Below the pieces are notes generated by a model. The model made no database searches. It had not been told where the DNA came from and was given only the letters and a program-made list of their open reading frames with translations. Position numbers and translations under genes: made by a program. Shown in pieces: positions 1,759 to 61,023 of a DNA stretch of 64,000 nt (position 1 is the first letter of the stretch; each line of letters starts with the position of its first letter). Origin of the DNA: Tubulanus polymorphus. Its lineage: Eukaryota > Animalia > Nemertea. The stretch is from NCBI RefSeq assembly GCF_964204645.1, contig NC_134033.1, positions 4,736,231-4,800,230 on the forward strand, in the 5' to 3' direction.

Positions 1759-4700
1759 TCATTTTATTGGTTGTCGTTTTCTGCGTTTATTTCGAGCTCG
1801 TATTGATTTCATATCGATAGTTAGAATAGTGTACAGAAGCGGGTTCAGAGTTGAGTTTATCGGCAAGAAAAGAACGGCCAGCCAAGCGGCCACCTGGTTC
1901 GGTATCTCGACCGAAAATACGGCGCAAAGCTGAACGATTATTAACGGTAACCAGCAAAATAAATTACACAAATTGATGACTAAACTGCGTCGAGCTAGAA
2001 CGAGTTCTGTAGGATCGGCTCTACCCGAACCGGACCTGCTTCCGGATACATACTTGTACATCTGCGCGTACGACATCATTATCAGAGTGAGAATGATCGC
2101 GTTTAATACAGCGAATATAGCGAACGAATATTGCCAGCCATTGACATCTATAGATATTAGATTCATAGGTAAACAGATACCCGTACTACCGTAAAAATTA
2201 TCACCGAAATAAGACGACCGAGACAGCGGCAGAAAGGCGATTAAAATCAGAAATATCCAGCATAAACAAGACAGAATCATAATGATATTTGAGGATAAAA
2301 CCGGGTTACCGGAAAATGGGTCGATTATATTCGAATATCTGAAACGCGTGAGGAGAAGGAGAAATGTTAAAGAACCTTCGCAAGATATCGTCACCACAAT
2401 TCCGGCAACACTACATAATGAATTACGAGTCCAAGTTTCAGAATTCAGAAAATAAACACCTTTATAAACGTGATCAGTTGCAGCGATCAGAAACAGATAA
2501 ACAGACATCAGGAAATCACAAAGCGCGATTTTAATGATGAGGATATCCGACGATTTATTCTGCGTTTCTGACGAGACTCGAATCGACCTAAAACGAAATA
2601 AGATAACGGTAATATTGGAAACGAACGTAAAACAAGCGATGATCCAGATAACAGCTGTGAGGACAGTGTTCTCAATGAGGTCTGAACACGATGAGAATTG
2701 ATCAGGATCCGGGAGACACCGGTCAATATTCGGCGCCATACAACAGAATTTAAACGCGTCCGAAGCGAGAAAATATAAAGACGTCAGATTATCGAAGATA
2801 TTATTTTCCGTAGAAATGATCCGAGAATTGTTGGTGAAATCTAGAACTCCCAATGAACTCAACCCAGTAAACGCGTATCTGGATATTGATTCGATTACGT
2901 TACTGCTGATATTCAAATATTTCAGCGCTGGTAAACCTCGGAATACGTTACGAGTAAGAAACGATATAGAGAGACCTTGGAGATCCATAACCGGAAGTGA
3001 CGTCAAACCATTGAAGCTTCCATCGTTCAAATATCTCAGCGGATTTCCAGCGAGTAAAAGTTGTTTCAAACTGTTTAAACCAGTAAATGTATCAGCGTGT
3101 AGTGATACTAGGCGATTATACGACAGATCTAATGTATTTAGATTGCGTAGATTAGAAAACGCGTTGGAGACAATGTCAGATAAATCATTACGGGAAATAT
3201 TGAGCAAGAAAAGGTACAGAAAAGAGGAAAATGTCGATTCATTGAATCTAACTCGGTTATTCGATAAAATCAAAACTCGAGTCGACGCGGCAAAAATTCC
3301 AGAAATATCCGATAATAAAGTATTTTCACAATCGATGAAACGACCTTGACATTTACAATAGTTAGGACACGTGACGTCGCAGTAAGCCTCGTCATCCGAG
3401 TTATGTTTACAATTAACGACGCCATCGCAAACTTCCGACTGAGGAATACATCGATGTTCGTCACCGCATTTAAACATTCCCGGACACGAAAACGTTTCGC
3501 AATTGAATTCATCTTGTGAATTGGGACAATCTGATCGACCATCGCACACGTGTCTAATCGGTATACAGTAAGACGATGGACATTTCACTGTACCAGCTGC
3601 ACATTCAAACTCATTACAATTCAGTAAATGTTCGAGTCTTCTACAAACAGGAAAACCTGTCGGCATTCTTTCTAAAATACATCTATCTCTTCTCGCGTAA
3701 CAATGAGGAGAATCGAATGAACATCTTTGTTTATCCGATTCGGTACAGAGTGAAGTGAAATTGGTCGTGCAGTAGTTCTCTGTAGTGCAGTGAATTTGTG
3801 GTTTGATTGTTATATCTGTCGTTACTACTTCATCTTCTTCGAGGTCCCCGCCACAATCTACAACGCCATCCCGATACAACAGAGAACTGATACATTCGCC
3901 ATTTACGCACAAAAACCCGTTACATTCGTCCGAAGAGCAGCCGATCTCATCGGATTTATCTTGACAGTCAACCAGTCCATCGCATCGTTTATATTTATCC
4001 ACACGTTGTCCGTCGTTACACTTAAATTGATCAGAGGAACATAAAATATGATAGCACGAGTTCTCATCCGAGCCATCGACGCAATCTCTCATAAAGTCAC
4101 AGAAACCGCTAATCGATATAACCTGTCCATCGTTACAGCGGAACTGACTGTGTAAATTGATATCCGTACAATCGAGTTCATCTTCACCGTGTTGACAGTC
4201 GTTTCTGGTATCGCATACGCGATGGTCGCTGATACATCTTTGATCGTTACATTCAAACTGCCACGATTTACAACCGCTTATAGAAGCTAACTCTTCATCA
4301 GTTACATCATAGGAACATAGCACGGAATGCGCTTCACCTGTGACATTATCGAAGGCAGTCACTGACCATTTAACTGTTTGAAAATATGTTATCCAATCTC
4401 TAATTACAACTGGTTTTATTGCCATAATTCTTCCGCTTGTATGATTAGTCAGTATAGCGCCATACTGATGCTCATAGTGGAAAACATTTATCAAATACTG
4501 AATTTCAATACTAGATGTTATTATACCTATGTCTCCGCCGATTGTAAGACACATTTCTCTAGCTGTTTGGATTGTTAAACTTTCAGTATGGAGCGTTTGC
4601 CAGTCTGTAAGTATTTGATAGCAATGCGCTTCTATACGAATCCATCCTCTTAGACACGTGGAGTTAAATCGTTCAATGTTTTCCCGCTTTATTCCAGTTA

Positions 4701-7700
4701 TATCGTTTTGTGAAGATGTATTAAAATGGTTTCTTTCTGTTTCACAAATGAATGTCGTGTGCGTCTCCTCGATTTGACACGGGAATCGAACCCAGTTCGC
4801 TGATCCTCGGGGATTATTCAGTATCATCGCCGTACACGGCATATTGACGTCATTTATCGGTTGTTTTCTTAGCGGAGATATCAATCCTCGAATAACTTCT
4901 GGTATCGTTTCATTAACGGCAGCAGGTTCAAACCATTTCGTGTAACTGAACGGTTTCCCATCAGACCAGGAGTAATAACCACTGGACTCCTTTTAAAACA
5001 AACAAACAAACAAACAAACAAATATTTGTTATACAACATTGCAGAAAACTCTTTTTGGATTATTTTCTGTGTTCTAATCATTTTTTGGAATAACTTAATA
5101 TCTTTACACATGACAAGAACGTAAATCATTATATCAAAGCTCAATTAGATGATTGATATTTGATATGTATTTTACCTGCCATTTCAATCCAATCATCATA
5201 ATAAGCGCCGCCTGTGAATATGCCTCAAGAAGCAGTTTTGTAGCAAACAGCTTTTTCACGGCCATCATTTCACGTTGAGAGTTGATACTGAGAAGATATC
5301 CTCCATATTTCTGTTGACAGTAAATTTCAGCGTTCTCCCAATTCAGACGTTCATGTTTGATGTATCTAATACACGAAACGCCTGAATCTAGAAAATCTGA
5401 TCGGCAGCCATTGATTCGGTGTTTCTTTAAAGGCGATTGTTCTGAAGTGTATTGAATTCGAAATATTGGCATGAACATTGACAACTCAAAATACAAGTCA
5501 TACCCGAGTAGACTGTACAATACAAGTCCTGCTACTGCGTTATTTTCACATATTGTTGTTGTATGACGGGTTTCTGTAAACGTGGAAAATAAATTGTTCG
5601 GATCATCAAATATTTTGATAATTTGTCTTAGTAATATTGATCCCCTTGTGCGGGTACTAACAGATTCGGAGCATGATGTTTGTCCGATAAATTTAAACAG
5701 GAATCTGATGTAATGATTTATATTTTTGTCAGTAGGAAAAGAGAAACCGAAGAATATAGTTTCGGAGGTTGATAATCCAGGGAAGTCCGGTGACTGCACG
5801 AGTCCACAATCTACATCGCTCTTTTTGACAACACCTCTTGAACCTGGATCCAGTTGACTTTGTTTTAATTTCTGACATTTACGTCGTAATACAATCATTA
5901 GTGGTGTCCTCCAGAATTCATATTTAGTGCGTAATACTTTCACGTGGTTTAATACGAGACTGGTGTTTAACACGTGACTATTGAGACTTATCGCTGAACA
6001 GGGATTCATAGCTCCACGATAACATCTGTCAATTTGATATTCGTGTTCTGATAATACATCAATATTTCCAATCGGTAGGCGTCGATTTTCAGGTGTAATC
6101 ATGAGACAGTATGACGTCATAGTGATTTGTCGTTCTCCTTCCTGTAGAACATACCCGTCACAATCAGTTGGAACTAATTTTAGTCTACCATATACTAGTA
6201 GATCATGCCAGTTGTAAGCGTACGCTGCTACAGTAACCGGTCCACCTGATGTAATCAGGCTGACGACAGATCGACCGTAGTATGAACCAGGACAATACGG
6301 ACCATAGCGTCTAGCTGTGAAATTACTGCCATCATATATATAAAAACCAGCTCGATCACAGTTTTCTGATAAAACTGTTAGTTTGAATCTAAAAGCTGAT
6401 GATGTATGCTCATAGATGTCGATTTTCGAGCTGAGTGCAAATCTAATGATACGATATTGTAACTTCCGTTTCGAATAACGGGGGAACAGACTGTAATAGT
6501 CCACTGAATGAGTATTTCCAACCTGCAATAGATGCAAACATAGAGTAAATCATCGGTATTCAATTGATGTTCATGCCATATTTTCCTTTGCCAATTTAAC
6601 CAAAAAATATTGCGACTCTGTCGTTAAAGGGTTAATGACTTGTGTTCGATCAGGTTTGATGTCAAAAAATTACGATTCCTGTGAATTCTACACATTATTT
6701 CATCGTTGTCAAACAATTTCAAATCAATACAATAAATATAAAAGATATTTTCATGCTGTTTCAACTCACTTTTTTATCTTCCACTTTGACGTCCGTTTCC
6801 TTCAATGATTCTATTTTGTATTCGAACGATGTTGAATTCCTCAACGATTTTCCGAAAAGATTCTCTGACAACAGTAAACACAATATGACGAGAAATCCGT
6901 CAGATTTTACGCCTAACGATTCCAGGAAGTTTTCGCCGAGTAAAATATCAGTTCCGACAACCGTTAAACCTTCCAGTTTATAAACACCGATGACGTCACC
7001 GGAAGTGACGAGATCACGTGACCAGTTGAAGACGACGTACTGCAGTATTTCAGCTGTGATAGACCAGCAGTATAAGCGTTTAGACCGAGTTATTACGTGC
7101 GGCCTATCACCAGGAATGAGCACTCCAGATTTGTTTTTATAAATCGAAATCGATGGATTCGAAATATTCCAATCTGATATTCTATACAGTTTTACAAATA
7201 GATTAGTTTTGAGAGTCACTCGGACCTGTCTCATTGAAAAAGTGACGATAGCTCTGTTAGTTTTAGTGTAAATAGAGATGGGCGGATGTCTGGTTTGTTC
7301 CCGTATATTCATTATAGGTTCACTTGTGTTCCATCCGTCATAAATTTGAACGGTCAAATCTAAACCTGCTTGTAACAATCTAAAATCTATTCTCTCAAAA
7401 GTCAGATTCATACCGAAACCCTCTGGTATCCCGGACCACTCCAGCTGCAGGAAACTACATAATATTCCATACATTTCGATGATAGCAAATTTATAACCAG
7501 TTTCAAAAGTTTGCAATTGTTTTAGTTTGTTGGACGAACAGTGGTGAACAGTTTTTAGATGGTTTTCCTCCAAACGATAAAATACATAAACTCGACTTCC
7601 TTTCACAACATCATTTACATCACTCTTAAACATCAACGATAATGAATTACTGCGGTAAATATCTAATTGTTTTCCAGCACCGCACAGTAAGTTATCAGAA

Positions 7701-8002
7701 TCGCTGATGTGAAGATAGTTATCTCTACAGAATATAGACGGCTCGATGTCGTAGTAAACTTGGACGCGAAAGGTACCCGGTAAAGAGCTGTTGACGAACC
7801 AACGACATTCAACACCGCGCGCTAACGACGGATAGTTCGGTGAAACGATGTAACCGGACGTAGAATCGAGTGAAAACCACGTATTGTTACACCGTGAACT
7901 GACAGTTACAGACGGTTGATCGGTAGAGATCCGATCAGTCGTCTGAACCGACGACAGTTTCATTAGTAGAATGAGTAATAACGTTAAGAGACTGCGCGTC
8001 AT
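1759..8002 (-). CDS. GRL101-like CUB/C-type lectin/LDLa/LRR G-protein-coupled receptor, copy 1 (intact, ~1936 aa)
   Basis: Exons 8002-6770, 6522-5176, 4989-1759, joined by phase-0 introns (AAA|GTGAGT...TTGCAG|GTT; CAG|GTAAAA...TAAAAG|GAG). Signal peptide MTRSLLTLLLILLMKLSS; CUB motif SGYIVSPNYP..C.W; CTL (LNWENAEIYC...WSDG...FICE) split by intron 2; LDLa repeats (CDG..DC.D.SDE); LRRs; hinge SSCSDLI; 7TM with CWLP and LPINSTLNPLLY. Confidence 0.88.
4996..5019. repeat. (AAAC)6 microsatellite forming the intron-2 acceptor tract of copy 1
   Basis: Unit number 6, 3, 1, 4, 3 in copies 1-5. Confidence 0.8.
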
Positions 8003-8308
8003 GTTGACATTCTCCTCGATCAGTTTAACTCTAAACACAGCGAATAGATTTTAATCCAATTAATGTTGGGCGTTTCCGAGTGAGTGAGAGAGAGCGGTAG
8101 AGAGGATGAGTCAGACTACACGGCGCTTACTAAAAATTAAATTCGATAATCTACGAAACCGAGTAATGATTAACGAGATTAAAAATCTAATTCGATATTC
8201 AGTGCCTAGTCGGTTTTATATTTATATATCTACATACAATTTTAAAATGTCCTTCGTCCAGTGTTAAGCCGACAACGCTACTGCGGCAAGCGAGGATTCA
8301 GCGATAAT

Positions 8309-9143: not shown

Positions 9144-12100
9144 TCATTTTATTGGTTGTCGTTTTCTGCGTTTATTTCGAGCTCGTATGGATTTCATATC
9201 GATAGTTAGAATTGTGTAAAGAAGCGGGTTCAGAGTCGAGTTTATCGGCAAGAAAAGAACGGCCAGCCAAGCGGCAACCTGGTTCGGTATCTCGACCGAA
9301 AATACGGCGCAAAACTGAACGATTATTAACGGTAGCCAGCAAAATAAATTACATAAATTGATGACTAAACTGCGTCGAGCTAGAACGAGTTCTGTAGGAT
9401 CGGCTCTACCCGAACCGGACCTGCTTCCGGATACATACTTGTACATCTGCGCGTACGACATCATTATCAGAGTGAGAATGATCGCGTTTAATACAGCGAA
9501 TATAGCGAACGAATATTGCCAACCATTGACATCTATAGATATTAAATTCATAGGTAAACAGATACCCGTACTACCGTAAAAATTATCACCGAAATAAGAC
9601 GACCGAGACAGCGGCAGAAAGGCGATTAAACTCAGAAATATCCAGCATAAACAAGACAGAATCACAATGATATTTGAGGATAAAACCGGGTTACCGGAAA
9701 ATGGGTCGATTATATTTGAATATCTGAAACGCGTGAGGAGAAGGAGAAATGTTAAAGAGCCTTCGCAAGATATCGTCACCACAATACCGGCAACACCGCA
9801 TAATGAACTACGAGTCCAAGTTTCAGAATTCAGAAAATAAACACCTTTATAAACGTGATCTGTTGCAGCGATCAGAAACAGATAAACAGACATCAGCAAA
9901 TCACAAAGCGCGATATTAATGATGAGGATATCCGACGATTTATTTTGCGTTTCTGACGAAACTCGAATCGACCTAAAACGAAATATAATAACGGTAATAT
10001 TGGAAGCGCAAGTAAAACAAGCGATGATCCAGATAACAGCTGTGAGGACAGTGTTCTCAATGAGGTCTGAACACGATGAGAATTGGTCAGGATCCGGGAG
10101 ACACCGGTAAATATTCGGCACCATACAACAGAATTTATACGCGTCCGAAGCGAGAAAATATAAAGACGTCAGATTATCGAAGATATTATTTTCCGTAGAA
10201 ATTATCCGAGAATTGTTGGTGAAATCTAGAATTCCCAGTGAACTCAACCCAGTAAACGCGTATCTGGATATTGATTCGATTACGTTACTGCTGATATTCA
10301 AATATTTCAGCGCTGGTAAACCTCGGAATACGTTACGAGTAAGAAAAGAAATAGAGAGTTCACGGAGATCCATAACCGGAAGTGACGTCAAACCATTGAA
10401 GCTTCCATCGTTCAAATATCTCAGCGGATTTCCGGCGAGTAAAAGTTGTTTCAAACTGTTTAAACCGGTGAATGTATCAGTATCTAGTGATACTAGGCGA
10501 TTATACGACAGATCTAATGTATTTAGATTGCGTAGATTAGAAAACGCGTTGGAGACAATGTCAGATAAATCATTACGGGAAATATTGAGTAAGAAAAGGT
10601 ACAGAAAAGAGGAAAATGTCGATTCATTGAATCTAACTCGGTTATTCGATAAAATCAAAATTCGAGTCGACGCGGCAAAAATTCGAGAAATATCCGATAA
10701 AAAAGTATTTTCACAATCGATGAAACGACCTTGACATTTACAATAGTTAGGACACGTGACGTCGCAGTAAGCCTCGTCATCCGAGTTACGTTTACAATTA
10801 ACGACACCATCGCAAACTTCCGACTGAGGAATACATCGATGTTCGTCAGCGCATTTAAACATTGCCGGACACGAAAACGTTTCGCAATCGAATTCATCTT
10901 CTGAATTGGGACAATCTGATCGACCATCGCACACGTGTCTAATCGGTATACAGTAAGACGATGGACATTTCACTGTACCAGCTGCACATTCAAACTCGTT
11001 ACAATTCAGTAAATGTTCGAGTCTTCTACAAACAGGAAAACCTGTCGGCATTCTTTCTAAAATACATCTATCTCTTCTCGCGTAACAATGAGGAGAATCG
11101 AATGAACATCTTTGTTTATCCGATTCGGTACAGAGTGAAGTGAAATTGGTCGTGCAGTAGTTCTCTGTAGTGCAGTGAATTTGTGGTTTAATCGTTATGT
11201 TGGTCGTTACTATTTCATCTTCTTCGAGGTCCCCGCCACAATCTACAACGCCATCCCGATACAACAGAGAACTGATACATTCGCCATTTACGCACAAAAA
11301 CCCGTTACATTCGTCTGAAGAGCAGCCGATCTCATCGGATTTATCTCGACAATCAACCAGTCAATCACATCGTTTATATTTACCCACACATTGTCCGTCG
11401 TTACACTTAAATTGATCAGAGGAACATGAAATATGATAGCACGAGTTCTCATCCGATCCGTCAACGCAATCTCTCATAAAATCACAGAAACCACTAATCG
11501 ATATAACCTGTCCATCGTTACAGCGGAACTGACTGTGTAAATTGATATCCGTACAATCGAGTTCATCTTCACCGTGTTGACAGTCGTGTCTGGTATCGCA
11601 TACGCGATGGTCGCTGATACATCTTTGATCGTTACATTCAAACTGCCACGATTTACAACCGCTTATAGAAGCCAACTCTTCACCAGTTACATTGTAGGAA
11701 CATAGCACCGAATGCGCTTCATCTGTCACATTATCGAAGGCAGTCACTGACCATTTCACTGTTTGAAAATATGTTATCCAATCTCTAATTACAACTGGTT
11801 TTATTGCCATAATTCTTCCGCTCGTATGATTAGTCAGTATAGCGCCATATTGATGCTGATAGTGGAAAACATTTATCAAATACTGAATTTCAATATCAGA
11901 TGTTATTATACCTATGTCTCCACCGATTGTAAGACACATTTCTCTAGCTTTGTGGATTGTTAAACTTTCAAATTGGAGCGTTTGCCAGGCTGTAAGTATC
12001 TGATAGCAATGCGCTTCTATATGAATCCATCCTCTTAGACACGTGGAGTTAAATAGTTCAAAGTTTTTCCGCTTTATTCCAGTTGTATCGTTTTGTGGAG

Positions 12101-15100
12101 ATGCATTAAAATCGTTTCTTTCTGTTTCACAAATGAATGTCGTGTGCGTCTCCTCGATTTGACACGGGAATCGAACCCAGTTCGCCGATCCTCGTGGATT
12201 ATTCAGTATCATCGCCGTACACGGCATATCGACGTCATTTATCGGTTGTTTTCTTAGCGGAGATATCAATCCTCGAATAACTTCTGGCATCGTTTCATTA
12301 ACAGCAGCAGGTTTAAACCATTCTGCGTAACTGAACGGTTTCCCATCAGACCACGAGTAATAACCACTGGACTCCTTTAAAAACAAACAAACAAATATTT
12401 GTTATACGTACATTGCAGAAAACCCTTTTTGGATTATTTTCTGTGTTCTAATCATTTCGGGAATAATTTAATATCTTGACACATGACAAGAATATAAATC
12501 GTAATCATCGAAGTTCTATTAGATGATTAATATTTGATGTGTATTTTACCTGCCATTTCAATCCAATCATCACAATAAGCCCTGCCTGTGAATATGCCTC
12601 AGAAAGCAGTTTTGTAGCGAACAGCTTTTTAACGGCCATCATTTCACGTTTAGAGTTGATACTGAGAAGATGTCCTCCATATTTCTGTTGACAGTAAATC
12701 TCAGCGTTCTCCCAATTCAGACGTTCATGTTTAATGTATCTAATACACGAAACGCCTGAATCTAGAAAATCTGATCGGCAGCCATTGATTCGGTGTTTCT
12801 TTAAAGGCGATTGTTCTAAAGTGTATTGGATTCGAAATATTGGCATGAACTTTGACAACTCAAAATATAAGTCATACCCGAGTAGACTGTACAATACAAG
12901 TCCTGCTACTGCGTTATTTTCACATATTGTTGTTGTATGACGGGTTTCTGTAAAGGTGGAAAATAAATCGTTCCGATCATCAAATATTTTGATAATTTGT
13001 GTTAGCAATATTGATCCCCTTATGCGGGTACCAATAGATTCGGAGCATGATGTTTGTCCGATAAATTTAAACAGGAATCTGATGTAATGATTTATATTTT
13101 TGTCAGTAGGAAAAGAAAAACTAAAGAATATAGTTAGGGAGGTTGATAATCCAGGGAAGTCCGGTGACTGCACGAGTCCACAATCTACGTTTCTTGAAAT
13201 TCCTCCGAATGACCTTGGATACAGTTGACTTTGTTTTAATTTCTGACATTTACGTCGTAATACAATCATTAGTGGTGACCTCCAGAATTCATACCTAGTT
13301 CGTAATGATTTCACATGGTTAAATACGAGACTGCTATTTAAAACGTGACTATTGAGACTTATCGTTAAACAGGGAGTCCTAGCTGTACGATAACATCTGT
13401 CAATTTGATATTCGTGTTCTGATAATACATCAATGTTTTCTATCGGTAGGCGTCGATTTTCAGGTGTAATCACGAGACAGTATGACGTCATTGTAATTTG
13501 TCGTCCTCCTTCCTGGAGAACATACCCGTCACAATCAGTAGGAACTAATTTTAGTCTACCAGTTACTAGTTTATCATGCCAGTTGTAAGCGTACGCTACT
13601 ACAGTAACCGGTCCCCCTGATGTAATCAGGCTGACGACAGATCGACCGTAGTATGAACCAGGACAATACGGACCATAGCGTCTAGCTGTGAAATTACTAC
13701 CATCAAATATATAAAAACCAGCTCGATCACAATTCTCTGATAGCACTGTTAGTTTCAAAACTGATGATGTATCCTCATAGATGTCGATTTTCGAGCTGAG
13801 TGCAAATCTACTGATACGATATTGTAACTTCCGTTTCGAATATCCGGGGAACAGACTATATTGCGACACTCTATGATGATGTGACACCTAAAATAGATTT
13901 GAACAAATGATTAATATTGATTCGATATTGATAAAAAAATATTCTACAGCATGTTTTCATGTTCTTTTTACCAACTTTTTTATCTTCCACTTTGACGTCT
14001 GTTTCCTTCAATGATTTTATTTTGTAGTCGATCGATGTTGAATTCCTCAACGATTTTCCGGAAAGATTCTCTGATAACAGTAAACACAATATCACGAGAA
14101 ATCCGTCAGATTTTACGCCTAACGATTCCAGGTAGTTTTCGCCGAGTAAAATATCAGTTCCGACAACCGTTAAACCCTCCAGTTTATAAACACCGATGAC
14201 GTCACCGGAAGTGACGAGATCACGTGACCAGTTGAAGACGACGTACTGCAGTATTTCAGCTGTGATAGACCAGCAGTATAAGCGTTTAGACCGAGTTATT
14301 ACGTGCGGCCTATCACCAGGAATGAGCACTCCAGATTTGTTTTTATAAATCGAAATCGATGGATTCGAAATATTCCAATCTGATATTCTATACAGTTTTA
14401 CAAATAGATTAGTTTTGAGAGTCACTCGGACCTGTCTCATTGAAAAAGTGACGATAGCTCTGTTAGTTTTAGTGTAAATAGAGATGGGCGGATGTCCGGT
14501 TTGTTCCCGTATATTCATTATAGGTTCACTTGTGTTCCATCCGTCATAAATTTGAACGGTCAAATCTAAACCTGCTTGTAACAATCTAAAATCTATTCTC
14601 TCAAAAGTCAGATTCATACCGAAACCCTCTGGTATCCCGGACCACTCCAGCTGCAGGAAACTACATAATATTCCATACATTTCGATGATAGCAAATTTAT
14701 AACCAGTTTCAAAAGTTTGCAATTGTTTTAGTTTGTTGGACGAACAGTGGTGAACAGTTTTTAGATGGTTTTCCTCCAAACGATAAAATACATAAACTCT
14801 ACTTCCTTTCACAACATCATTTACATCACTCTTAAACATCAACGATAATGAATTACTGCGGTAAATATCTAATTGTTTTCCATCACCGCACAGTAAGTTA
14901 TCAGAATCGCTGATGCGAAGATAGTTATCTCTACAGAATATAGACGGCTCGATGTCGTAGTAAACTTGGACGCGAAAGGTACCCGGTAAAGAGCTGTTGA
15001 CGAACCAATGACATTCAACACCGCGCGTAAACGACGGATAATTCGGTGAAACGATGTAACCGGACGTAGAATCGAGTGAAAACCACGTATTGTTACACCG

Positions 15101-15208
15101 TGAACTGACAGTTACAGACGGTTGATCGGTAGAGATCCGATCAGTCGTCTGAACCGACGACAGTGTCATTAGTAGAATGAGTAATAACGTTAAGAGACTG
15201 CGCGTCAT
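9144..15208 (-). pseudogene. GRL101-like receptor copy 2, single in-frame nonsense codon in exon 3
   Basis: Exons 15208-13976, 13887-12550, 12374-9144. GGA>TGA at 11363-11361 (KRCD* versus KRCDG in paralogs). ORFs 11361..12386 and 9144..11297 are in the same frame; no other lesion seen. Confidence 0.8.
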
Positions 15209-16915: not shown

Positions 16916-19900
16916 TCATTTGATTGGTTGTCGTTTTCTGCGTTTATTTCGAGCTCGTATGGATTTCATATCGATTGTTAGAATAGTGTAAAGAAGCGGG
17001 TTCAGAGTCGAGTTTATCGGCAAGAAAAGAATGGCCAGCCAAGCGGCCACCTGGTTCGGTATCTCGACCGAAAATACGGCGCAAAACTGAACGATTATTA
17101 ACGGTAACCAGCAAAATAAATTACACAAATTGATGACTAAACTGCGTCGAGCTAGAACGAGTTCTGTAGGATCGGCTCTACCCGAACCGGACCTGCTTCC
17201 GGATACATACTTGTACATCTGCGCGTACGACATCATTATCAGAGTGAGAATGATCGCGTTTAATACAGCGAATATAGCGAACGAATATTGCCAACCATTG
17301 ACATCTATAGATATTAAATTCATAGGTAAACAGATACCCGTACTACCGTAAAAATTATCACCGAAATAAGACGACCGAGACAGCGGCAGAAAGGCGATTA
17401 AACTCAGAAATATCCAGCATAAACAAGACAGAATCATAATAATATTTGAGGATAAAACCGGGTTACCGGAAAATGGGTCGATTATATTCGAATATCTGAA
17501 ACGCGTGAGGAGAAGGAGAAATGTTAAAGAGCCTTCGCAAGATATCGTCACCACAATTCCGGCGACACCGCATAATGAACTACGAGTCCAAGTTTCAGTA
17601 TTCAGAAAATAAACACCTTTATAAACGTGATCAGTTGCAGCGATCAGAAACAGATAAACAGACATCAGGAAATCACAAAGCGCAATATTAATGATGAGGA
17701 TATCCGACGATTTATTTTGTGTTTCTGACGAAACTCGAATCGACCTAAAACGAAATAAGATAACGGTAATATTGGAAACGAATGTAAAACAAGCGATGAT
17801 CCAGATAACAGCTGTGAGGACAGTGTTCTCAATGAGGTCTGAACACGATGAGAATTGATCAGGATCCGGGAGACACCGGTCAATATTCGGCGCCATACAA
17901 CAGAATTTATACGCGTCCGAAGCGAGAAAATATAAAGACGTCAGATTATCAAAGATATTATTTTCCGTAGAAATGATCCGAGAATTGTTGGTGAAATCTA
18001 GAACTCCCAGTGACCTCAACCCAGTAAACGCGTATCTGGATATTGATTCGATTACGTTACTGCTGATATTCAAATATTTCAGCGCTGGTAAACCTCGGAA
18101 TACGTTACGAGTAAGAATCGATATAGAGAGTTCACGGAGATCCATAACCGGAAGTGACGTCAAACCGTTGAAGCTTCCATCGTTCAAATATCTCAGCGGA
18201 TTTCCAGCGAGTAAAAGTTGTTTCAAACTGTTTAAACCAGTGAATGTATTAGTATCTAGTGATACTAGGCGATTATACGACATATCTAATGTATTTAGAT
18301 TGTGTAGATTAGAAAACGCGTTGGAGACAATGTCAGATAAATGATTACGGGAAATATTGAGTAAGAAAAGGTACAGAAAAGAGGAAAATGTCGATTCATT
18401 GAATCTAACTCGGTTATTCGATAAAATCAAAACTCGAGTCGAAGCGGCAAAAATTCCAGATATATCCGATGAAAAAGTATTTTCACAATCGATGAAACGA
18501 CCTTGACATTTACAATAGTTAGGACACGTGACGTCGCAGTAAGCCTCGTCATCCGAGTTATGTTTACAATTAACGACGCCATCGCAAACTTCCGACTGAG
18601 GAATACATCGATGTTCGTCAGCGCATTTAAACATTCCCGGACACGAAAAAGTTTCGCAATTGAATTCATCTTCTGAATTGGGACAATCTGATCGACCATC
18701 GCACACGTGTCTAATCGGTATACAATAAGACGATGGACATTTCACTGTACCAGCTGGACATTCAAACTCATTACAATTCAGTAAATGTTCGAGTCTTCTA
18801 CAAACAGGAAAACCTGTCGACATTGTTTCTAAAATACATCTTTCTCTTCTCGCGTAACAATGAGGAGAATCGAATGAACATCTTTGTTTATCCGATTCGT
18901 TACAGAGTGAAGTGAAATTGGTCGTGCAGTAGTTCTCTGTAGTGCAGTGAATTTGTGGTTTGATCGTTATATTGGTCGTTACTATTTCATCTTCTTCGAG
19001 GTCCCCGCCACAATCTACAACGCCATCCCGAAACAACAGAGAACTGATACATTCGCCATTTACGCACAAAAACCCGTTACATTCCCCCGAAGAGCAGTCG
19101 ATCTCATCGGATTTATCTTGACAGTCAACCAGTCCATCGCATCGTTTATATTTATCCACACATTGTCCGCCGTTACACTTAAATTGATCAGAGGAACATA
19201 AAATATGATAGCACGAGTTCTCATCCGAGCCATCGACGCAATCTCTCATAAGGTCACAGAAACCGCTAATCGATATAACCTGTCCATCGTTACAGGGGAA
19301 CTGACTGTGTAAATTGATATCCGTACAATCGAGTTCATCTTCACCGTGTTGACAGTCGTTTCTGGTATCGCATACGCGATGGTCACTGATACATCTTTGA
19401 TCGTTACATTCAAACTGCCACGATTTACAACCGCTTATAGAAGCCAACTCTTTACCAGTTACATCATAGGAACATAGCACGGAATGCGCTTCATCTGTGA
19501 CATTATTGAAGGCAGTCACTGACCATTTCACTGTTTGAAAATATGTTATCCAATCTCTAATTACAACTGGTTTTATTGCCACAATTCTTCCGCTGGTATG
19601 ATTAGTCAGTATAGCGCCATATTGATGCTGATAGTGGAAAACATTTATCAAATACTGAATTTCAATACTAGATGTTATTATACCTATGTCTCCGCCGATT
19701 GTAAAACACATTTCTCTGGCTGTTTGGATTGTTAAACTTTCAGTATGGAGCGTTTGCCAGTCTGTAAGTATTTGATAGCAATGCGCTTCTATATGAATCC
19801 ATCCTCTTAGACACGTGGAGTTAAATCGTTCAATGTTTTCCCGCTTTATTTCAGTTGTATCGTTTTGTGAAGATGCATTAAAATCGTTTCTTTCTGTTTC

Positions 19901-22900: not shown

Positions 22901-23119
22901 AGAGCTGTTGACGAACCAGCGACATTCAACACCGCGCGTAAACGACGGATAGTTCGGTGAAACGATGTAACCGGACGTAGAATCGAGTGAAAACCACGTA
23001 TTGTTACACCGTGAACTGACAGTTACAGACGGTTGATAGGTAGAGATCCGATCAGTCGTCTGAACCGACGACAGTTTCATTAGTAGAATGAGTAATAACG
23101 TTAAGAGACTGCGCGTCAT
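16916..23119 (-). CDS. GRL101-like CUB/CTL/LDLa/LRR GPCR copy 3 (intact, ~1931 aa)
   Basis: Exons 23119-21893, 21645-20308, 20146-16916 with phase-0 GT-AG introns at the same positions as copy 1; all three exons are open. Confidence 0.88.
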
Positions 23120-40900: not shown

Positions 40901-43900
40901 TCGTTCAAAGTTGTTGAGTGTTATTTCAGTTGTATCGTTTTGTGAAGATGCATTAAAATCGATTCTTTCTGTTTCACAAATGAATGTCGTGTGCGTCTCC
41001 TCGATTTGACACGGGAATCGAACCCAGTTCGCTGATCCTCGTGGATTATTCAGTATCATCGCCGTACACGGCATATTGACGTCATTTATCGGTTGTTTTC
41101 TTAGCGGAGATATCAATCCTCGAATAACTTCTGGTATCGTTTCATTAACAGCAGCAGGTTCGAACCATTCTGTGTAACTGAACGGTTTCCCATCAGACCA
41201 CGAGTAATAACCACTGGACTCCTTTAAAAACAAACAAACAAATACTTGTCATACGTACAATGCAGAAAACTCTTTTTGGGTTGTTTTCTGTGTTCTAATC
41301 ATTTTTGGAATAACTTAATATCTTCAAACATGACAAGAACATAGATCATAATCATCAAAGCTCAATTAAATGATTAATATTCGATATTATTTTACCTGCC
41401 ATCTCAATCCTATCATCTTTTTGGATTATTTTCTGTGTTCTAATCATTTTTGGAATAACTTTTTATCTTTTTACATGTCAAGAACATTGATCATAATCAT
41501 CAAAGCTCAATTAAATGATTAATATTCGATATTATTTTACCTGCCATCTCAATCCTATCATCTTTTTGGATTATTTTCTGTGTTCTAATCATTTTTGGAA
41601 TAACTTTTTATCTTTTTACATGTCAAGAACATTGATCATAATCATCAAAGCTCAATTAGATGATTGATATTTGATTTGTATTTTACCTGCCATTTCAATC
41701 CAATCATCACAATAAGCGCCGCCTGTGAATATCCCTCATGAAGCAGTTTTGTAGCAAACAGCTTTTTTACGGCCATCATTTCACGTTGAGAGTTGATACT
41801 GAGAAGATGTCCCGCGTATTTCTGTTGACAGTAAATTTCAGCGTTCTCTTAATTCAGGCGTTCATGTTTGATGTATCTAATACACGAAACACCTGAATCT
41901 AGAAAATCTGATCGGCAGCCATTGATTCGGTGTTTCAGTAAAGGCGATTGTTCTAAAGTGTATTGAATTCGAAATATTGGCATGTACGTGGATAACTCAA
42001 AATACAGGTCATACCCGAGTAGACTGTACAATACAAGTCCTGCTAATGCGTTATTTTCACATATTGTTGTCTTATGACGGGTTTCTGTAAACGTGGAAAA
42101 TAAATTGTTCGGATCATCAAATATTTTGATAATTTGTGTTAGTAATATTGATCCCCTTGTGCGGGTACCAACAGATTCGGAGCATGATGTTTGTCCGATA
42201 AATTTAAACAGGAATCTGATGTAACGATTGATATTTTTGTCAGTAGGAAAAGAAAAACTAAAGAATATAGTTTCGGAGGTTGATAATCCAGGGAAGTCCG
42301 GTGACTGCACGAGTCCACAATCTACAGTGTTCCTTGAAATTCCACCCATAAACCGTGGAGCCACTTGACTTTGTTTTAATTTCTGACATTTACGTCGTAA
42401 TACAATCATTAGTGCTGACCTCCAGAATTCATATTTAGTGCGTAATAATTTCACATGGTTAAATACGAGACTGGTATTAAACACGTGACTATCGAGACTT
42501 ATCGTTAAACAGGGAGTCCTAGCTGTACGATAACATCTGTCAATTTGATATTCGTGTTCTGATAATACATCTATGTTTTCTATTGGTTGGCGTCGATTTT
42601 CAGGTGTAATCACGAGACAGTATGACGTAATAGTGATTTGACGTTCTCCTTCCTGTAGAACATACCCGTCACAATCAGTAGGAACTAATTTTAGTCTACC
42701 AGTTGCTAGTATATCATACCAGTTGTAAGCGTATGCTGCTACAGTAACCGGTCCACCTGATGTAATCAGGCTGACGACAGATCGACCGTAGTATGAACCA
42801 GGACAATACGGACCATAGCGTCTAGCTGTGAAATTACTACCATCAAATATATAAAAACCAGCTCGATCACAATTCTCTGATAAAACTGTTAGTTTTAATC
42901 CATATCCTGATAATTCATACTCATGAATGTCGATTTTCGAGCTAAATGCAAATCTACTGATACGATATTGTAACTTCCTTTTCGAATAACGGGGGTACAG
43001 ACTGTAATACCGCACTGAATGATCATTTCCTACCTACAATTGATGAAAACATAGAGTAAATCATCGGTTTTCAATTAATGTTCATATCTTATTTTCCATT
43101 TAAACAAAAAATATGACTTATGTTCGATCGGATTTGATTGCAAAAATTACGTGAATTGCACTTTCATCGTTGATAAAACAATTTCAAATCAATACAATGA
43201 ATTGAAGATATATTTTCATGCTGTTTTAACTCACTTTTTTATCTTCCACTTTGAAGTCTGTTTCCTTCAATGATTCTATTTTGTATTCGATCGATGTTGA
43301 ATTCAAAGATTTTCCGAAAAGATTCTCTGATAACAGTAAACACAATATCACGAGAAATCCGTCAGATTTTACACCTAACGATTCCAGGTAGTTTTCGCCG
43401 AGTAAAATATCAGTTCCGAAAACCGTTAAACCTTCCAGTTTATAAACACCGATGACGTCACCTGAAGTGACGAGATCACGTGACCAGTTGAAGACGACGT
43501 ACTGCAGTATTTCAGCTGTGATAGACCAGCAGTATAAGCGTTTAGACCGAGTTATTACGTCCGGCCTATCACCAGGAATGAGCACTCCGGATTTGTTTTT
43601 ATAGATCGGAATCGATGGATTCGAAATATTCCAATCTGATATTCTATACAGTTTTACAAATAGATTAGTTTTGAGAGATACTTGGAACTGTTTCATTGAA
43701 AAAGTGGTGACAGCTCTGTTAGTTTTACTGTAAATAGAGATGGGCGGATGTCCGGTTTGTTCCCTCATTATAGGTTCACTTGTGTTCCATCCGTCATAAA
43801 TATGAACGGTCAGATTTAAACCTGGTTGTTTTATTCTGAAATCAACTTTCTCAAAAGTCAAATTCATACCGAAACCCTCTGGTAACCCGGACCACTCGAG

Positions 43901-44455
43901 CTGCAGGAAATTACATAATATTCCATACATGTCGTTTGCAAATTTATAACCAGTTTTTAAAGTTTGTAATTGTTTTAGTTTGTTTGACGAACAGTGGTGA
44001 ACAGTTTTTAGATGATTTTCCTCCAAACGATAAAATACATAAACTCGACTTCCTTTCACAACATCATTTACATCACTCTTAAACATCAACGATAATGAAT
44101 TACTGCGGTAAATATCTAATTGTTTTCCAGCACCGCACAGTAAGTTATCAGAATCGCTGATGCGAAGATAGTTATCTCTACAGAATATAGACGGCTCGAT
44201 GTCGTAGTAAACTTGGACGCGAAAGGTACCCGGTAAAGAGCTGTTGACGAACCAACGACATTCAACACCGCGCGTAAACGACGGATAGTTCGGTGAAACG
44301 ATGTAACCGGACGTAGAATCGAGTGAAAACCACGTATTGTTACAATGTGAACTGACAGTTACAGACGGTTGATAGGTAGAGATCCGATCAGTCGTCTGAA
44401 CCGACGACAGTTTCATTAGTAGAATGAGTAATAACGTTAAGAGACTGCGCATCAT
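37991..44455 (-). pseudogene. GRL101-like receptor copy 5, two nonsense codons
   Basis: Exons 44455-43235, 43033-41687, 41221-37991. TGG>TAA at 41851-41849 and GAG>TAG at 40297-40295; NPxxY changed to NQLLY; intron 2 expanded by a tandem triplication. Confidence 0.85.
41272..41706. repeat. 3 x 145-bp tandem repeat spanning the exon 2 3' end and intron 2 of copy 5
   Basis: Units start at 41272, 41417 and 41562 (ctttttgg...); each ends in tttacctgccat.tcaatcc.atcat. Confidence 0.85.
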
Positions 44456-54868: not shown

Positions 54869-57800
54869 ATGCAGCGAATGAAAGTGTTGTTCGTAGTTTT
54901 AGTGATCGCTTGCGGAGACTGTATATTTACGCGGGCTGATCGCGCAAACTCTGTCGAGGAAGCCGCGTCTGTTACAGTCAGTTCATCTTGTAACAACACT
55001 CAATACTCCGTCGATTCTACGTCTGGTTACATCGTTTCACCGAACTATCCGTCGTTAGCGCGCGGTGTTGAATGTCGTTGGTTCGTCAACAGCTCTTTGC
55101 CGGGAAGTTTTCTCGTTCAAGTTTACTACGATATCGAGCCGTCGATATTCTGTAACGAAAACTACCTTCTCGTCGGTGAGTCCGACAACAAACTCTGCGC
55201 TACCGGAAGAAAACAACTAGATATCCGCAGTAACGGGTTGATTTCGTTGTTGTTTAGGACTAACGTCGATGGAGCGCGAGGTAGTCGGGTTTACATCATA
55301 TATCGTTTTGAAGAACAGAGTCGCTTGAAAATCTTACATACATGTCACAAGCATGCAGTAAAAGAATTACCAACTCAAACAGGTTATGAATTCATGATTT
55401 CTACCCGGCAATGTAAATTGTTGTTAGAATGGATCGGGATGCCAGACGGGTTTGCAATGAATTTAACGTTTATACAGATAGATTTCAGATTATATCCAGG
55501 TGAGGATCCGATGAAAACTCGTCCTCAAATTTACGACGGATGGAACAGCACCAGTGAACCTATAGCTCTTATACGAGAACAAACCGGACATCCACCTTCA
55601 TCGTTTTATACCAAAACTAATAAAGCGTGTGTAGAATTTGAAAGTGTCATTCACGTTGTGTCGTTTAAGTCGCAGTTACTCGTGCAAGTTTACAAAATAT
55701 CAGATTGGAACGTCTCTAACCCGTTAATTCAAGTCTATATTAAATCAGGACTGCTCACTACAATTGATGGAATACCACACATATCAACTCAGTCTAAACA
55801 CTTATACTGCTGGTCTATCACAGTCGATGTTCTGCAGTACGTCGTCTTCAACTGGACACGTGATCTCGTCTCGTCACCAGGTGTCGTTGGTGTATATAAA
55901 CAGGAAGGGTTACGTATTGTGAGAACTGATATTTTACTCAGTTTTAACCATCTTAAATCTCTGAGTGTAAAATCAGACGGATTTCTCGTCATTCTGTGCG
56001 TTTTCACGACATCGGATTTTTTAAGATCGAATTTGAAAATAGAATTAAAAGTGAAATCACTGACAATATCAGATGTCTACGTCAACAAGCGACGGATATG
56101 GGTAAGTTATAACAATGATTTGTAAATTTGGTTCGTGTAAAAGAATCATTGTAATAATCTATGATTTTGATGGCGATTTTGACCAGTGAAACTTTACCGA
56201 GAAACTTGGAATAACAACGTTATGTGTGACCCAAAACACATGTGGTTTACGTGGAGTAATTATGATGATTTGTGGATAATTTCAGGTTGTGAGTGGATTG
56301 ATATTGTCGTATTGTAAACGTTCAATGCTGTTATCAATTCTCTTATATTTCAGCATTCAAACACAAACTCAATATCAGCTAATCGATTGTTCCCGAGATC
56401 AAAGAATACACTGTATCGTGTAACTACATTACAACTAAACTGGAAAGTGAACATCTATGTAGAACGGTTGAAACTAACAGTGCTATCAGAAAACTGTGAT
56501 CGAGCTGGTTTTTATATATTTGATGGTAGTAATTTCACAGCTAGACGCTATGGTCCGTATTGTCCTGGTTCATTCTACGGTCGATCAGTCGTCAGCCTGA
56601 TTACATCAGGTGGACCGGTTACTGTAGTAGCATACGCTTATTACTATAACGATCAGCAGTTAACAGTTGATCGTTCTGACCAGTCATATCTTAGATTTGC
56701 TCCTACTGATTGTGATGGTTATGTTCTACAGGAAGAAGAACGTCGGATCAATATGACGTCACACTGTCTCGTGATTACACCTGAAAATCGACGCCTTCGC
56801 TTGAAAAATATTCACATATTATCAGAACACGAATATCAAATTGACCGATGTTTTCTCAAGATGTCATTGTCATGTGATCAGTTTCTGAGTTTGGGTAATC
56901 AGTTTCTTAATAACAGTCTCGTATTAAACACTGTAGATTTCACAGGTCGGTATTGGTTCTGGCATACACCACTAATTGTTAAACTACGTCGTAAATGTCT
57001 AGGAGTGAAAAAAGGAGGTAATTCTGGATTTGCCGGTTCCCTTATCCCAATTGTGGCAAAAGATAAATGCGGACTCGTGCAGTCCCCGAACTACCCGGGT
57101 GAGGCACGACGTACATCAGAATCGATTTCATATAGATTTGAAAACCCGACACTACAGAATGTATTTCAATATTACAGATTTATTGTCAAATTCATTGGAT
57201 CAGTTTCATGCGAAACAGACAGATCCGGTCGATATGATCCTATTATTTTGATACAGCTACTAGAATACGAGCTCTACCTAAATGGAAAACGTTTGAAAAT
57301 TATTAGTACTCAGCTTGAAACTAAAATATGTGAAAATAACGCGGTTCGTGGACTTATATTCTATAGTTTAACAGATAATAATCTGCGTTTTGAAGTTAAG
57401 AATAATATCCCCACGTTTAAAATACAATACACTTTACACGAGTCGTTACCGATTAAACATTTCGATGGTTTCTACTGTAAACAAGGATTTCTGGATTCCG
57501 GAATTTCCTGCATCAAATTCATCGGAGATGAACGTCTGAATTGGGAGAACGCTGAAATATACTGTAGACAGAAGTACGCGGGACATCTACTCAGTATCAA
57601 CTCAGAACAGGAAATGATTTCCATCAAAAGATTATTCGCGACAGAACTTCTCCGAATGGCGTACACATTGAAAGCGCTCATAATGATGATTGGATTGAAA
57701 TGGCAGGTAAGACTAATGTTGGCAAATATTTATTAGAAAAGTAAGATTTTTAATGAAAAATTGTTAAATAATTTATCATTTTGTTCACGAAACAGAATGA

Positions 57801-60800
57801 TGGTTATTACACGTGGACTGACGGTAAACCATTGAGCTACACAGAGTGGTATAAACCTGTTATAAATGAAACGATACCAGAAGTTATTCGAGGATTGATA
57901 TCTCCGCTAAGAAAACAACCGATAAATGACGTCAATATGCCGTGTACGGCGATGATGCTGAATAATCCACGAGGATCGGCGAACTGGGTTCGATTCCCGT
58001 GTCAAATCGAGGAGACGCACACGACATTCATTTGTGAAACAGAAAGAATAGATTCCAATGCATCTTCGCAAAACGATACTACTGGAATAAAGTGGAAAAA
58101 CTTTGAACGATTTAACTCCACGTGTCTAAGAGGATGGATTTATATAGAAGCGCATTGCTATCAGATACTTACAGCCTGGCAAACGCTCCAATCTGAAAGT
58201 TTAACAATCCACACAGCTAGAGAAATGTGTCTTACAATCGGCGGAGACATAGGTATAATAACATCTAATATTGAAAATCAGTATTTGATAAATGTTTTCC
58301 ACTATCAGCATCAATATGGCGCTATACTGACTAATCATACGAGCGGAAGAATTGTGGCAATAAAACCAATTGTAATTAGAAATTGGATAACATATTTTCA
58401 AACAGTGAAATGGTCAGTGACTGCCTTTGATAATGTCACAGATGAAGCGCATTCCGTGTTATGTTCCTATAATGTAACTGGTGAAGAGTTAGCTTCTATA
58501 AGCGGTTGTAAATCGTGGCAGTTTGAATGTAACGATCACAGATGTATCAGCGACCATCGCGTATGTGATACCAGAAACGACTGTCAACACGGTGAAGATG
58601 AACTCAATTGTACGGATATCAATTTACACAGTCAGTTCCGCTGTAACGATGGACAGGTTATATCGATTAGCGGTTTCTGTGACTTTATGAGAGATTGCGT
58701 CGATGGCTCGGATGAGAACTCTTGCTATCATCGACCGTGTTTATCTACGCAATATCGCTGTTCTAATCACCAATGCATCGATAGTTATAAACGATGTGAC
58801 GGACTAGCCAACTGTAAAGACGGTTCCGATGAGATTGGATGCACTGCCGAGCTTTGTCAGGGGTTCTCGTGCGTGGACGGTGAATGTATTAGTTCCCAGT
58901 TGTATCGGGATGGTGTCGTGGATTGTAGCGGAAGTCTCGAAGAAGACGAATTGGTCACTAATATGACAGTGAATCCCGAGGTTTACTGTAATAATGACAA
59001 TCACTGTACGACTCGTTTCACGGATCTGTGTAAGGAATCGGATGAACAAAGATGTTCGTTCAATTCTCCGCGCTGTTATTCCCGACACGAAAGGTGTATT
59101 TTAGAAAGGATGCCGATTGGTTTCCCGGTATGTAGAAATCTTGAACATATTCTCGCGTGTAATGACTTCGAATGCGCGGCTGGTACTGTAAAATGTCCGG
59201 CATCTTACTGTATACCGATCAGGCACGTTTGTGACGGTCGATCCGATTGTCCTAATTCTGAAGATGAACGAAACTGCGAGACTTGGTCGTGTCCGGGAAT
59301 GTTTAAATGCGGCCAGGATAATCGATGTATTCCGCAATCTGAAGTTTGCGACGGTGTCGTAAATTGTAAACTTAACTCGGATGACGAGTCATTCTGTAAG
59401 GTCACGTGTCCTGAACGTTGTAATTGCCGGGGTTATTTCATCGATTGTGAAAATGCTCTGTTATCAGATATTACTGGTCGTTTTATAGAATCAACTCGGG
59501 TTTTGATTTTGTCGAATAACCGAGTCGTATTTAACGAGTCGACGTTCAACTCTTTCATTTATATTCGTTTTCTCGATATTTCGGGCAATGATTTGTCTTA
59601 CATCGTTCCAAACACGTTTTCTAATCTAAACAATCTATACACATTAGACCTTACACACAACCGCATACAATCATTATCTGCTAATACATTCGCAGGTTTG
59701 ATCAGTTTAAAACAATTATTTCTTATCGGAAATCCGCTGCAACATTTAGAAGACGGTAGTTTTCGAGGTCTGACGTCACTCACTGCTCTCGATCTTCACG
59801 GACTTTCTATATCGGTTCTCGGTGAAAATGTATTTAAAGGTTTATCCGCATTACAGTCGTTAAATATCAGCGGTAACAGAATCCATTATATTTCCAGTTA
59901 TGCTTTTTACGGATTGGTTCTACTTAAAATTCTAGATCTCGTCAAAAATGCCAAAGTGATATTTGTAAAAAGAAACGTTCTTGGCGATCTTACATCATTG
60001 AAATACCTCGCTTCGGATGCTTACAAATTTTGCTGCATGGCGCCGAATGTAGACCGATGTCTTCCCGAAGCTGATCAATTTTCGACATGCTCTGACCTGA
60101 TGGGTAACACTGTACTGAGAGCCATCATCTGGATGATCGCATCTTTCAGTTTTCTCGCTAACAGTATCGTTATTGTATTTCGTGTTAAAGCTTTGCGGAT
60201 GGAATCCTCCGGAACACGTAACACATCTTCCGATATCATCATCATAAATATTGCCGGTTGTGATTTTCTGATGTCGGTCTATTTGTTTTTGATCGCAGGA
60301 GCTGACCACGCTTTCAAAGGCGTTTATTATCTGAATTCTGAAGCTTGGACGGATAGCTCATTGTGTCGTCTCGCCGGGGTTATTGTCACCGTTTCGTGCG
60401 AAGGTTCCTTAAGTTTTCTCTTAATTCTAACACGGCAGAGATATTCAAATATCGTCAACCCGTTTTCTAGAAGTCCGATTTTAACTCCGAAATACGTTAT
60501 CGGTATATGCTGCATTTGTTGGCTCATTATAAGCACAGTTTCTATTCTACCACTGTCATCGTCGTCTTACTTCGGAGACAATTTTTACGGTACTACCGGA
60601 GTTTGTTTGCCTATGAATTTACTGACGAGCGACGCCAATGGCTGGCACTATTCATTCGCTATTTTTGCCTTGTTTAATGCAGCCATATTGGCTACGATAA
60701 TGACGACGTACGCTCAGATGTATAGACTCGTATCTGGAAGTAGGTCGGGCTCGGGTAGAGTCGATCCTACAGAACTCGTTCTAGCTCGACGCAGTTTAGT

Positions 60801-61023
60801 AATCAATCTTTGTAATCTATTTTGCTGGCTACCGATAATAATCGTTCAGTTTTGCGCCGTATTTTTGGTCGAGATACCGAACCAGGTGGCCGCTTGGCTG
60901 GCTGTTCTATTTTTACCGATCAACTCGTCTCTGAATCCGCTTCTTTATACAATACTAACTATCGATATGAAATCTATTCGTGAACGCAATAAACGACGAC
61001 TTGGATTGACAGCTAGTAAATAA
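54869..61023 (+). CDS. GRL101-like CUB/CTL/LDLa/LRR GPCR copy 6, divergent paralog (intact, ~1937 aa)
   Basis: Exons 54869-56101 (TGG|GTAAGT), 56354-57706 (TTTCAG|CAT ... CAG|GTAAGA) and 57796-61023 (AAACAG|AAT), all phase 0. Signal peptide MKVLFVVLVIACGDC; same domain order as the minus-strand copies. Confidence 0.88.

What the first reader, a model, noticed from the sequence alone, without database searches (positions are those of the whole stretch)
1759..61023. Tandem array of giant CUB-CTL-LDLa-LRR-7TM receptors: a lectin/CUB recognition ectodomain fused to a GRL101-type GPCR
Seen: the separate ~420-, ~460- and ~1080-aa ORFs are three exons of one ~1,930-aa gene. Both introns are phase-0 GT-AG at identical positions in all six copies, and the first C-type lectin domain is split across intron 2 (…IGLKWQ|ESSGYYSWSDG…), so the exons must be joined. 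Established: Lymnaea GRL101 and LGR type C receptors have LDLa+LRR+7TM; CUB and CTL modules are typical recognition domains. Inference: this is an extended-ectodomain GPCR family undergoing birth-and-death expansion (3 intact, 3 damaged copies in 60 kb), plausibly an immune or chemosensory pattern-recognition GPCR system.
Basis: partly seen in the sequence, partly recalled or inferred. Interest (0 to 1): 0.85.

Follow-up and report, generated by a model that had tools for sequence, protein, structure and literature searches.

The report
Ribbon-worm giant GRL101-like receptor array
This stretch of a ribbon-worm genome holds six copies (three intact, three broken) of a three-exon gene for a very large cell-surface receptor; they belong to a family of about 300 copies with variable outer modules and a nearly constant signalling end, probably a set of sensors, and of a receptor type already known to multiply in snails.

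Summary
Observation confirmed. Six copies of a three-exon gene of about 1,935 aa: signal peptide, 5-6 CUB-like modules, two C-type-lectin-like domains, LDLa repeats, LRRs and a rhodopsin 7TM. Three are intact, three broken. The genome is the nemertean Tubulanus polymorphus (contig-length match). Splicing is inferred, not shown: no RNA run holds it. In 25 paralogues both introns are phase-0 GT-AG, and exon sums stay at 1,911-1,944 aa while introns range 81-1,567 nt. The lectin-splitting intron recurs in other animals. The family has about 300 copies, forms one clade, and is separate from a probable GRL101 orthologue. Variation sits in alternate CUB modules; exon trees disagree (recombination). 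The apparent positive selection mostly disappears under a rate-variation control. The first lectin domain lacks sugar-binding motifs and is conserved. The architecture is not new: Macrostomum and oyster database proteins have it, Biomphalaria has a published CTL-GRL101 cluster, and apple snails have 29-132 tandem GRL101 genes expressed in tentacles. What is new is the scale and the variable-CUB pattern. Ligand unknown; chemosensory slightly favoured over immune. The scan reported this family seven times before on other DNA of this genome.

The parts
6770..8002 (-). Copy 1 exon 1: signal peptide, CUB1 (conserved, keeps E87/D94/D128 calcium-type residues), CUB2 (variable), CUB-like module 3
5176..6522 (-). 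Copy 1 exon 2: CUB-like module 4 (variable), small beta module 5, CUB6 (variable), first half of CTL domain 1
1759..4989 (-). Copy 1 exon 3: second half of CTL1, a CTL-like domain 2 (by cysteine pattern only), 5-6 Pfam LDLa plus atypical cysteine modules, about 8 LRRs, hinge, 7TM; intact copy, 1,936 aa by exon sum
9144..15208 (-). Copy 2: exons 15208-13976, 13887-12550, 12374-9144; premature TGA at 11363; short 88-nt intron 1
16916..23119 (-). Copy 3, intact: exons 23119-21893, 21645-20308, 20146-16916; 1,931 aa
30710..36302 (-). Copy 4, pseudogene: frameshift near 35959, 225-nt deletion near 32230, stop at 31138, 3' end lost
37991..44455 (-). Copy 5, pseudogene: stops at 41851 and 40297; donor segment of intron 2 triplicated (41687, 41541, 41396)
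54869..61023 (+). Copy 6, intact and inverted, from another subclade (55-75% identical by exon): exons 54869 (or 54878)-56101, 56354-57706, 57796-61023; about 1,935 aa

Best explanation
These are members of a lineage-specific family of about 300 GRL101-like type C leucine-rich-repeat GPCRs that works as a germline-encoded sensor repertoire. SHOWN: the gene structure (by conservation), copy number, one clade, birth and death of copies, exchange of sequence between copies, variable CUB2/CUB4/CUB6 on a conserved LDLa-LRR-7TM core under purifying selection. INFERRED: ligands, probably proteins or other macromolecules, bind the variable CUB loops (in CUB2 these align with the L3/L5/L9 loops that form the ligand end of CUB domains, from my own knowledge of the family). 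Binding would be passed through LDLa-LRR-hinge to release an RXFP1-type tethered switch in extracellular loop 2, and near-identical cytoplasmic faces would feed one G-protein pathway. The role is most likely outward chemosensing (about 45% within this reading), then immune or non-self sensing (about 35%), then allo- or gamete recognition (about 20%).
For: Exon sums 1,911-1,944 aa across 25 models with introns of 81-1,567 nt in all length classes. Same phase-0 intron inside CTL1 in ENA loci L035/L036 and in Macrostomum. 308 TM6 motif matches; 370-374 first-look candidates for exons 1 and 2. Monophyly 100/100 on a long stem. Tree length per codon 3.0-3.9 in CUB2/4/6 against 0.8-1.2 in CUB1, CUB3, LDLa and 7TM; 7TM omega 0.16. 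Exon trees reject each other, AU p<1e-6. Closest solved structure is RXFP1, E 1e-71. The loop-2 motif CLPM and the hinge are kept in 25 of 25 copies, matching the switch described in bioRxiv 10.1101/2022.01.22.477343. Apple-snail GRL101 expansions are expressed in tentacles and palps (PMC6573481); a CTL-GRL101 cluster lies in a schistosome-resistance locus (PMC12297450).
Against: No transcript or protein evidence. The M2a/M1a signal (omega2 3.4-4.0) falls to P about 0.03 for CUB2 and CUB4 and to none for CUB6 once gap-adjacent codons are dropped and site-rate classes added; synonymous distance is also high in the variable blocks. They may therefore be old variants that escape homogenisation rather than arms-race loops. 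The family has lost the acid of the DRY motif and has N for D at 6.44, so coupling may differ from RXFP1. AlphaFold models are of low to moderate confidence (pLDDT 51 and 63).
Confidence: 0.65

Rival explanations
1. Dosage or neutral amplification: one receptor function, copied by unequal crossing-over. The variable blocks are low-constraint surface loops that tolerate change and escape conversion.
For: Positive-selection signal largely lost in the control; dN below dS in nearly all windows; half the window's copies are broken.
Against: Most sampled copies are intact over about 5.8 kb of coding sequence with 7TM omega 0.16, across subclades 63-96% identical. Variation alternates by module, although all six modules are similar beta-sandwiches.
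Confidence: 0.18
2. Endocrine receptors for insulin/relaxin-like peptides binding the LRR, as proposed for type C LGRs, with the CUB-CTL stalk as a spacer or adhesion element.
For: Type C membership (PMC4079206); a few selected sites lie in LDLa and at the LRR start.
Against: About 300 receptors is far more than a hormone system needs. The LRR is conserved (about 95% among near copies). A separate 64%-identical GRL101 orthologue candidate lies at G000:C8:16025783.
Confidence: 0.07
3. Non-signalling or constitutively active surface proteins (adhesion, decoy or scavenger) in which the 7TM is an anchor or is switched off by ligand.
For: All 25 copies lack D/E at 3.49 and have N at 6.44, unlike most other GRL101-like rows.
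Against: R3.50, E6.30, D2.50, W6.48-P6.50, NPxxY, the loop-2 motif and the third intracellular loop are nearly invariant, as expected for G-protein coupling.
Confidence: 0.07
4. The CUB ORFs and the GPCR ORF are separate genes.
For: No RNA evidence here; the one RefSeq model retrieved (P0001, 689 aa) is partial.
Against: No signal-peptide-like start is evident in exons 2 and 3. The CTL domain is split. Junction phase is conserved in 25 copies and in other animals. In three copies (L011, L012, C6:21322971) long open frames of 1,567-1,608 aa occur; in L011 and L012 they run through a short in-frame intron 2.
Confidence: 0.03

Closest known systems
Biomphalaria sudanica SudRes2 GRL101-like cluster (PMC12297450)
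   Same: Tandem cluster of CTL-LDLa-LRR-7TM receptors with copy gain, loss and truncation; proposed as immune recognition receptors
   Different: 12 genes, no CUB stack described; here 5-6 CUB-like modules and about 300 copies
Ampullariid (apple snail) GRL101 expansion (PMC6573481)
   Same: Lineage-specific tandem expansion of GRL101-type receptors; expressed there in tentacles and labial palps
   Different: 29-132 genes per genome; the passage read does not describe the ectodomain; an independent expansion by inference
Macrostomum lignano PAA57333.1 (2,163 aa), Ostrea edulis LOC125653234, ENA loci L035/L036
   Same: Same CUB+CTL+LDLa+LRR+7tm_1 order; Macrostomum and the ENA loci share the phase-0 intron inside CTL1
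   Different: Uncharacterised database models, 31-37% identical over exon 3, CUB regions barely alignable; they keep an acidic residue at 3.49 and D6.44
Lymnaea GRL101 / LGR type C2
   Same: Multiple LDLa + LRR + short hinge + 7TM
   Different: No CUB/CTL stalk, more LDLa repeats; falls in a separate clade, and a separate orthologue candidate exists in this genome
Human RXFP1 (PDB 7TMW), LGR type C1
   Same: Closest solved structure; short hinge and loop-2 C-phi-P-phi motif kept
   Different: One LDLa, single copy, known peptide ligand

Membership tests
LGR type C / GRL101-like (C2) | Rhodopsin-class 7TM | tested here: met
   7tm_1 E 1e-18 to 2e-21; best PDB hit RXFP1
LGR type C / GRL101-like (C2) | LRR ectodomain with short type C hinge | tested here: met
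   LRR_8 hits; hinge aligns to RXFP1 without a long insert; hinge motif in 25 of 25 copies
LGR type C / GRL101-like (C2) | Multiple LDLa modules (PMC4079206) | tested here: met
   5-6 Pfam LDLa
LGR type C / GRL101-like (C2) | Loop-2 C-phi-P-phi motif shared by LGRs | tested here: met
   CLPM in 25 of 25; motif described in the RXFP1 paper
LGR type C / GRL101-like (C2) | G-protein signalling and ligand | not testable with these tools
   Needs a cell assay; DRY acid lost and D6.44 is N
Orthologue of Lymnaea GRL101 | Groups with molluscan and crustacean GRL101 in a 7TM tree and is the best genome match | tested here: not met
   Outside the 95/95 GRL101 clade, though deeper placement is unresolved; another locus is 64% identical against 37-40% for the array
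Calcium-dependent C-type lectin | EPN/QPD and WND sugar-binding motifs | tested here: not met
   QPI and WVR in CTL1; an Amphiura relative keeps QPD and WHD. CTL2 is recognised only by cysteine pattern.
CUB domain | CUB fold or profile for each module | tested here: inconclusive
   CUB1 passes Pfam; CUB2 Z 8.1 and CUB6 Z 9.5 to CUB structures; module 3 only a language-model hit of 0.93; module 4 Z 6.4 plus motif; module 5 unresolved
Diversified immune receptor family | Robust positive selection at the binding surface | tested here: inconclusive
   Strong in M2a/M1a, weak after control
Diversified immune receptor family | Expression in immune cells or induction on challenge | not testable with these tools
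   No RNA run holds the locus

The most novel reading that the evidence does not exclude
A roughly 300-member GPCR repertoire whose specificity is set by hypervariable loops on alternate CUB modules, reshuffled between copies by recombination, and read out by a uniform 7TM with altered activation switches: an antigen-receptor-like non-self or allorecognition system built on a GPCR.
Probability: 0.15. Interest if true: 0.85.

Novelty: new variant of a known kind. Interest (0 to 1): 0.45.

Why it matters
GRL101-like receptors are orphans that have expanded repeatedly in snails, where they are tied to tentacle chemosensing and to schistosome resistance. This family is the largest such expansion I found any record of (about 300 against at most 132). 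With only two introns and clear variable and constant modules it is an unusually tractable place to ask what these receptors sense and where specificity lies. It also shows that a CUB-CTL-LDLa-LRR-7TM layout with a shared intron exists across several animal groups without, in the papers searched, a name or a study.

Tried and rejected
RNA support: no run holds the stretch as RNA; X4 (RNA by guess) laid nothing and X1 behaves as genomic DNA. Intron loss in the 1,608- and 1,568-aa frames: rejected, these are 81- and 72-nt in-frame introns with GT/AG kept. Categorical novelty of the architecture: rejected. Sugar-binding lectin as the variable sensor: rejected on motif and conservation. Arms-race positive selection: not established. 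Orthology to Lymnaea GRL101: not met. Profile comparisons of exon 1 with exon 2 and with the Macrostomum CUB region gave nothing significant. Paper searches for this architecture by name found no characterisation; the library lacks most subscription papers.
Full report
Observation. Six-frame translation and self-comparison show six homologous units. Copy 1 has exons 8002-6770, 6522-5176 and 4989-1759 on the minus strand, of 411, 449 and 1,076 codons, with phase-0 GT-AG introns. Copies 2-5 repeat these junctions, and the inverted copy 6 has homologous ones shifted by one or two codons. Copies 1, 3 and 6 are intact. Copy 2 has one stop, copy 5 two, and copy 4 a frameshift, a 225-nt deletion, a stop and a lost 3' end.

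Organism and family size. The window lies on contig C9 of a 267.8-Mb assembly. C9 is 16,481,795 bases long, the same as the contig carrying a Tubulanus polymorphus RefSeq protein whose first part matches C9 at 99%, so the genome is that palaeonemertean. Exons 1 and 2 each gave 370-374 first-look candidates. A degenerate pattern for a TM6 peptide matched 308 times against 3 for its control, and the exon-2 donor motif 174 times against 1. The family therefore has about 300 copies, in arrays on at least nine contigs. A few copies sit on small contigs and could be haplotype duplicates.

Is the splicing real? No RNA was available: no run holds the stretch as RNA, the one guessed RNA run laid nothing, and the other is genomic. 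The indirect case is strong. In 25 gene models with exon-3 identity of 63-97%, both introns are phase-0 GT-AG and the exon sum is 1,911-1,944 aa, while introns range from 81 to 1,567 nt in all three length classes. The first C-type-lectin-like domain is cut after its IGL motif, and the same phase-0 intron is present in two loci of an unidentified animal in an ENA assembly and in Macrostomum. Following the operators' rule, the joined protein was not built, searched or folded; lengths are sums, and searches went exon by exon or used the natural 1,608-aa frame of L011, which reads through its 81-nt intron.

Anatomy. Pfam finds one CUB in exon 1, half a Lectin_C in exon 2, and LDLa, LRR and 7tm_1 in exon 3. 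AlphaFold models (pLDDT 51 and 63) match CUB structures for exon 1 residues 155-275 (Z 8.1, tied with unrelated beta-barrel hits elsewhere in the model) and exon 2 residues 221-362 (Z 9.5, all top 19 hits CUB-containing). Language-model features suggest CUB for exon 1 residues 275-411 (0.93) and weakly for exon 2 (0.86). I read this as five to six CUB-like modules, with modules 3-5 less certain. CUB1 keeps the acidic calcium-type residues in 19 of 25 copies; CTL1 has QPI and WVR where sugar-binding lectins have EPN/QPD and WND (motif knowledge is my own). The closest solved structure to LRR-7TM is RXFP1 (E 1e-71). The hinge, CLPM in loop 2, R3.50, E6.30 and NPxxY are kept, but all 25 copies lack the DRY acid and have N at 6.44.

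Evolution. The family is one clade (100/100) on a long stem, outside the clade of Lymnaea, Babylonia and crustacean GRL101; its deeper placement is unresolved. A separate locus on C8 is 64% identical to the Lymnaea 7TM, against 37-40% for the array. Among 16 intact copies, tree length per codon is 3.0-3.9 in CUB2, module 4 and CUB6, but 0.8-1.3 in CUB1, module 3, LDLa, LRR and 7TM. Trees of the three exons reject one another (AU p<1e-6), so copies are mosaics. My own M2a/M1a implementation gave omega2 3.4-4.0 at 7-11% of sites in those three modules and nothing in the CTLs or 7TM (7TM omega 0.16). After removing gap-adjacent codons and allowing site-rate classes, the signal fell to P about 0.03 for two modules and none for CUB6. 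Synonymous distance is raised in the same blocks. The variable blocks are real, but are at least partly old variants that escape homogenisation; adaptive diversification is suggested, not shown.

Mechanism. The most likely working is a sensor repertoire: ligand binds variable CUB loops; the conserved LDLa-LRR-hinge relays this to a loop-2 tethered switch as described for RXFP1 (bioRxiv 10.1101/2022.01.22.477343); a near-constant cytoplasmic face couples to one G protein. Gene structure, copy number and the variable/constant pattern are shown. Binding, relay and coupling are inferred. Tissue role is open. Chemosensing has the best expression precedent (PMC6573481; PMC6267866; PMC13403566), and immunity has a genetic association (PMC12297450).

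Comparison and novelty. The full domain order is in Macrostomum PAA57333.1 and an Ostrea edulis model. CUB-LDLa-LRR-7TM proteins occur in Littorina, Haliotis and Antedon, and CUB-CTL-LDLa-LRR in Amphiura. Tandem GRL101 expansions of 12 CTL-bearing genes (Biomphalaria) and 29-132 genes (apple snails) are published. I found no paper on the CUB-stack form or on this nemertean family. It meets the tests for a GRL101-like type C LGR, fails orthology to GRL101 itself and fails the classical lectin motifs. Verdict: a real, striking but precedented expansion; new variant of a known kind; interest 0.45. Seven earlier scan notes describe the same family on other DNA of this genome; I checked their main claims independently.

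Noticed in passing
window:44692-47327: A 2.6-kb element with 402-bp direct terminal repeats (99.5% identical), inserted about 240 bp upstream of the copy 5 start codon. It has 343- and 124-aa minus-strand ORFs with only weak coiled-coil hits and no TG..CA ends. Two more 99% identical full copies and about 15 solo repeats occur in the genome. Looks like a young non-autonomous LTR-like element.
   Followed up: partly
window:26302-30253: Broken plus-strand LINE (ORF1, endonuclease, reverse transcriptase) just beyond the truncated 3' end of copy 4.
   Followed up: partly
window:49094-51666: Minus-strand LINE remnant whose ORF1 carries a GDSL esterase domain.
   Followed up: partly
window:16055-16357 and 37087-37431: Endonuclease-like LINE fragment upstream of several copies, duplicated with the gene unit.
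   Followed up: no
window:62787-63308: 174-aa minus-strand frame resembling TM3-TM5 of another rhodopsin-type GPCR; no Pfam hit.
   Followed up: partly
G000:C8:16025783-16026445: Probable true GRL101 orthologue (64% to the Lymnaea 7TM). Several further type C LGR-like 7TMs (42-49%) lie on C1, C3, C4, C6, C7 and C10, some in 1,030-1,140-aa single exons.
   Followed up: no
window:52557-52668: Short palindromic element of about 110 bp; 1-694 repeats at 25170-25856.
   Followed up: no
L035:10001-16557, L036:3916-13096 (ENA ERZ25069853): Two-large-exon CUB-CTL-LDLa-LRR-7TM genes in an unidentified animal within a metagenome assembly; several such ORFs there and in ERZ25072999 hint at another expansion.
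   Followed up: partly
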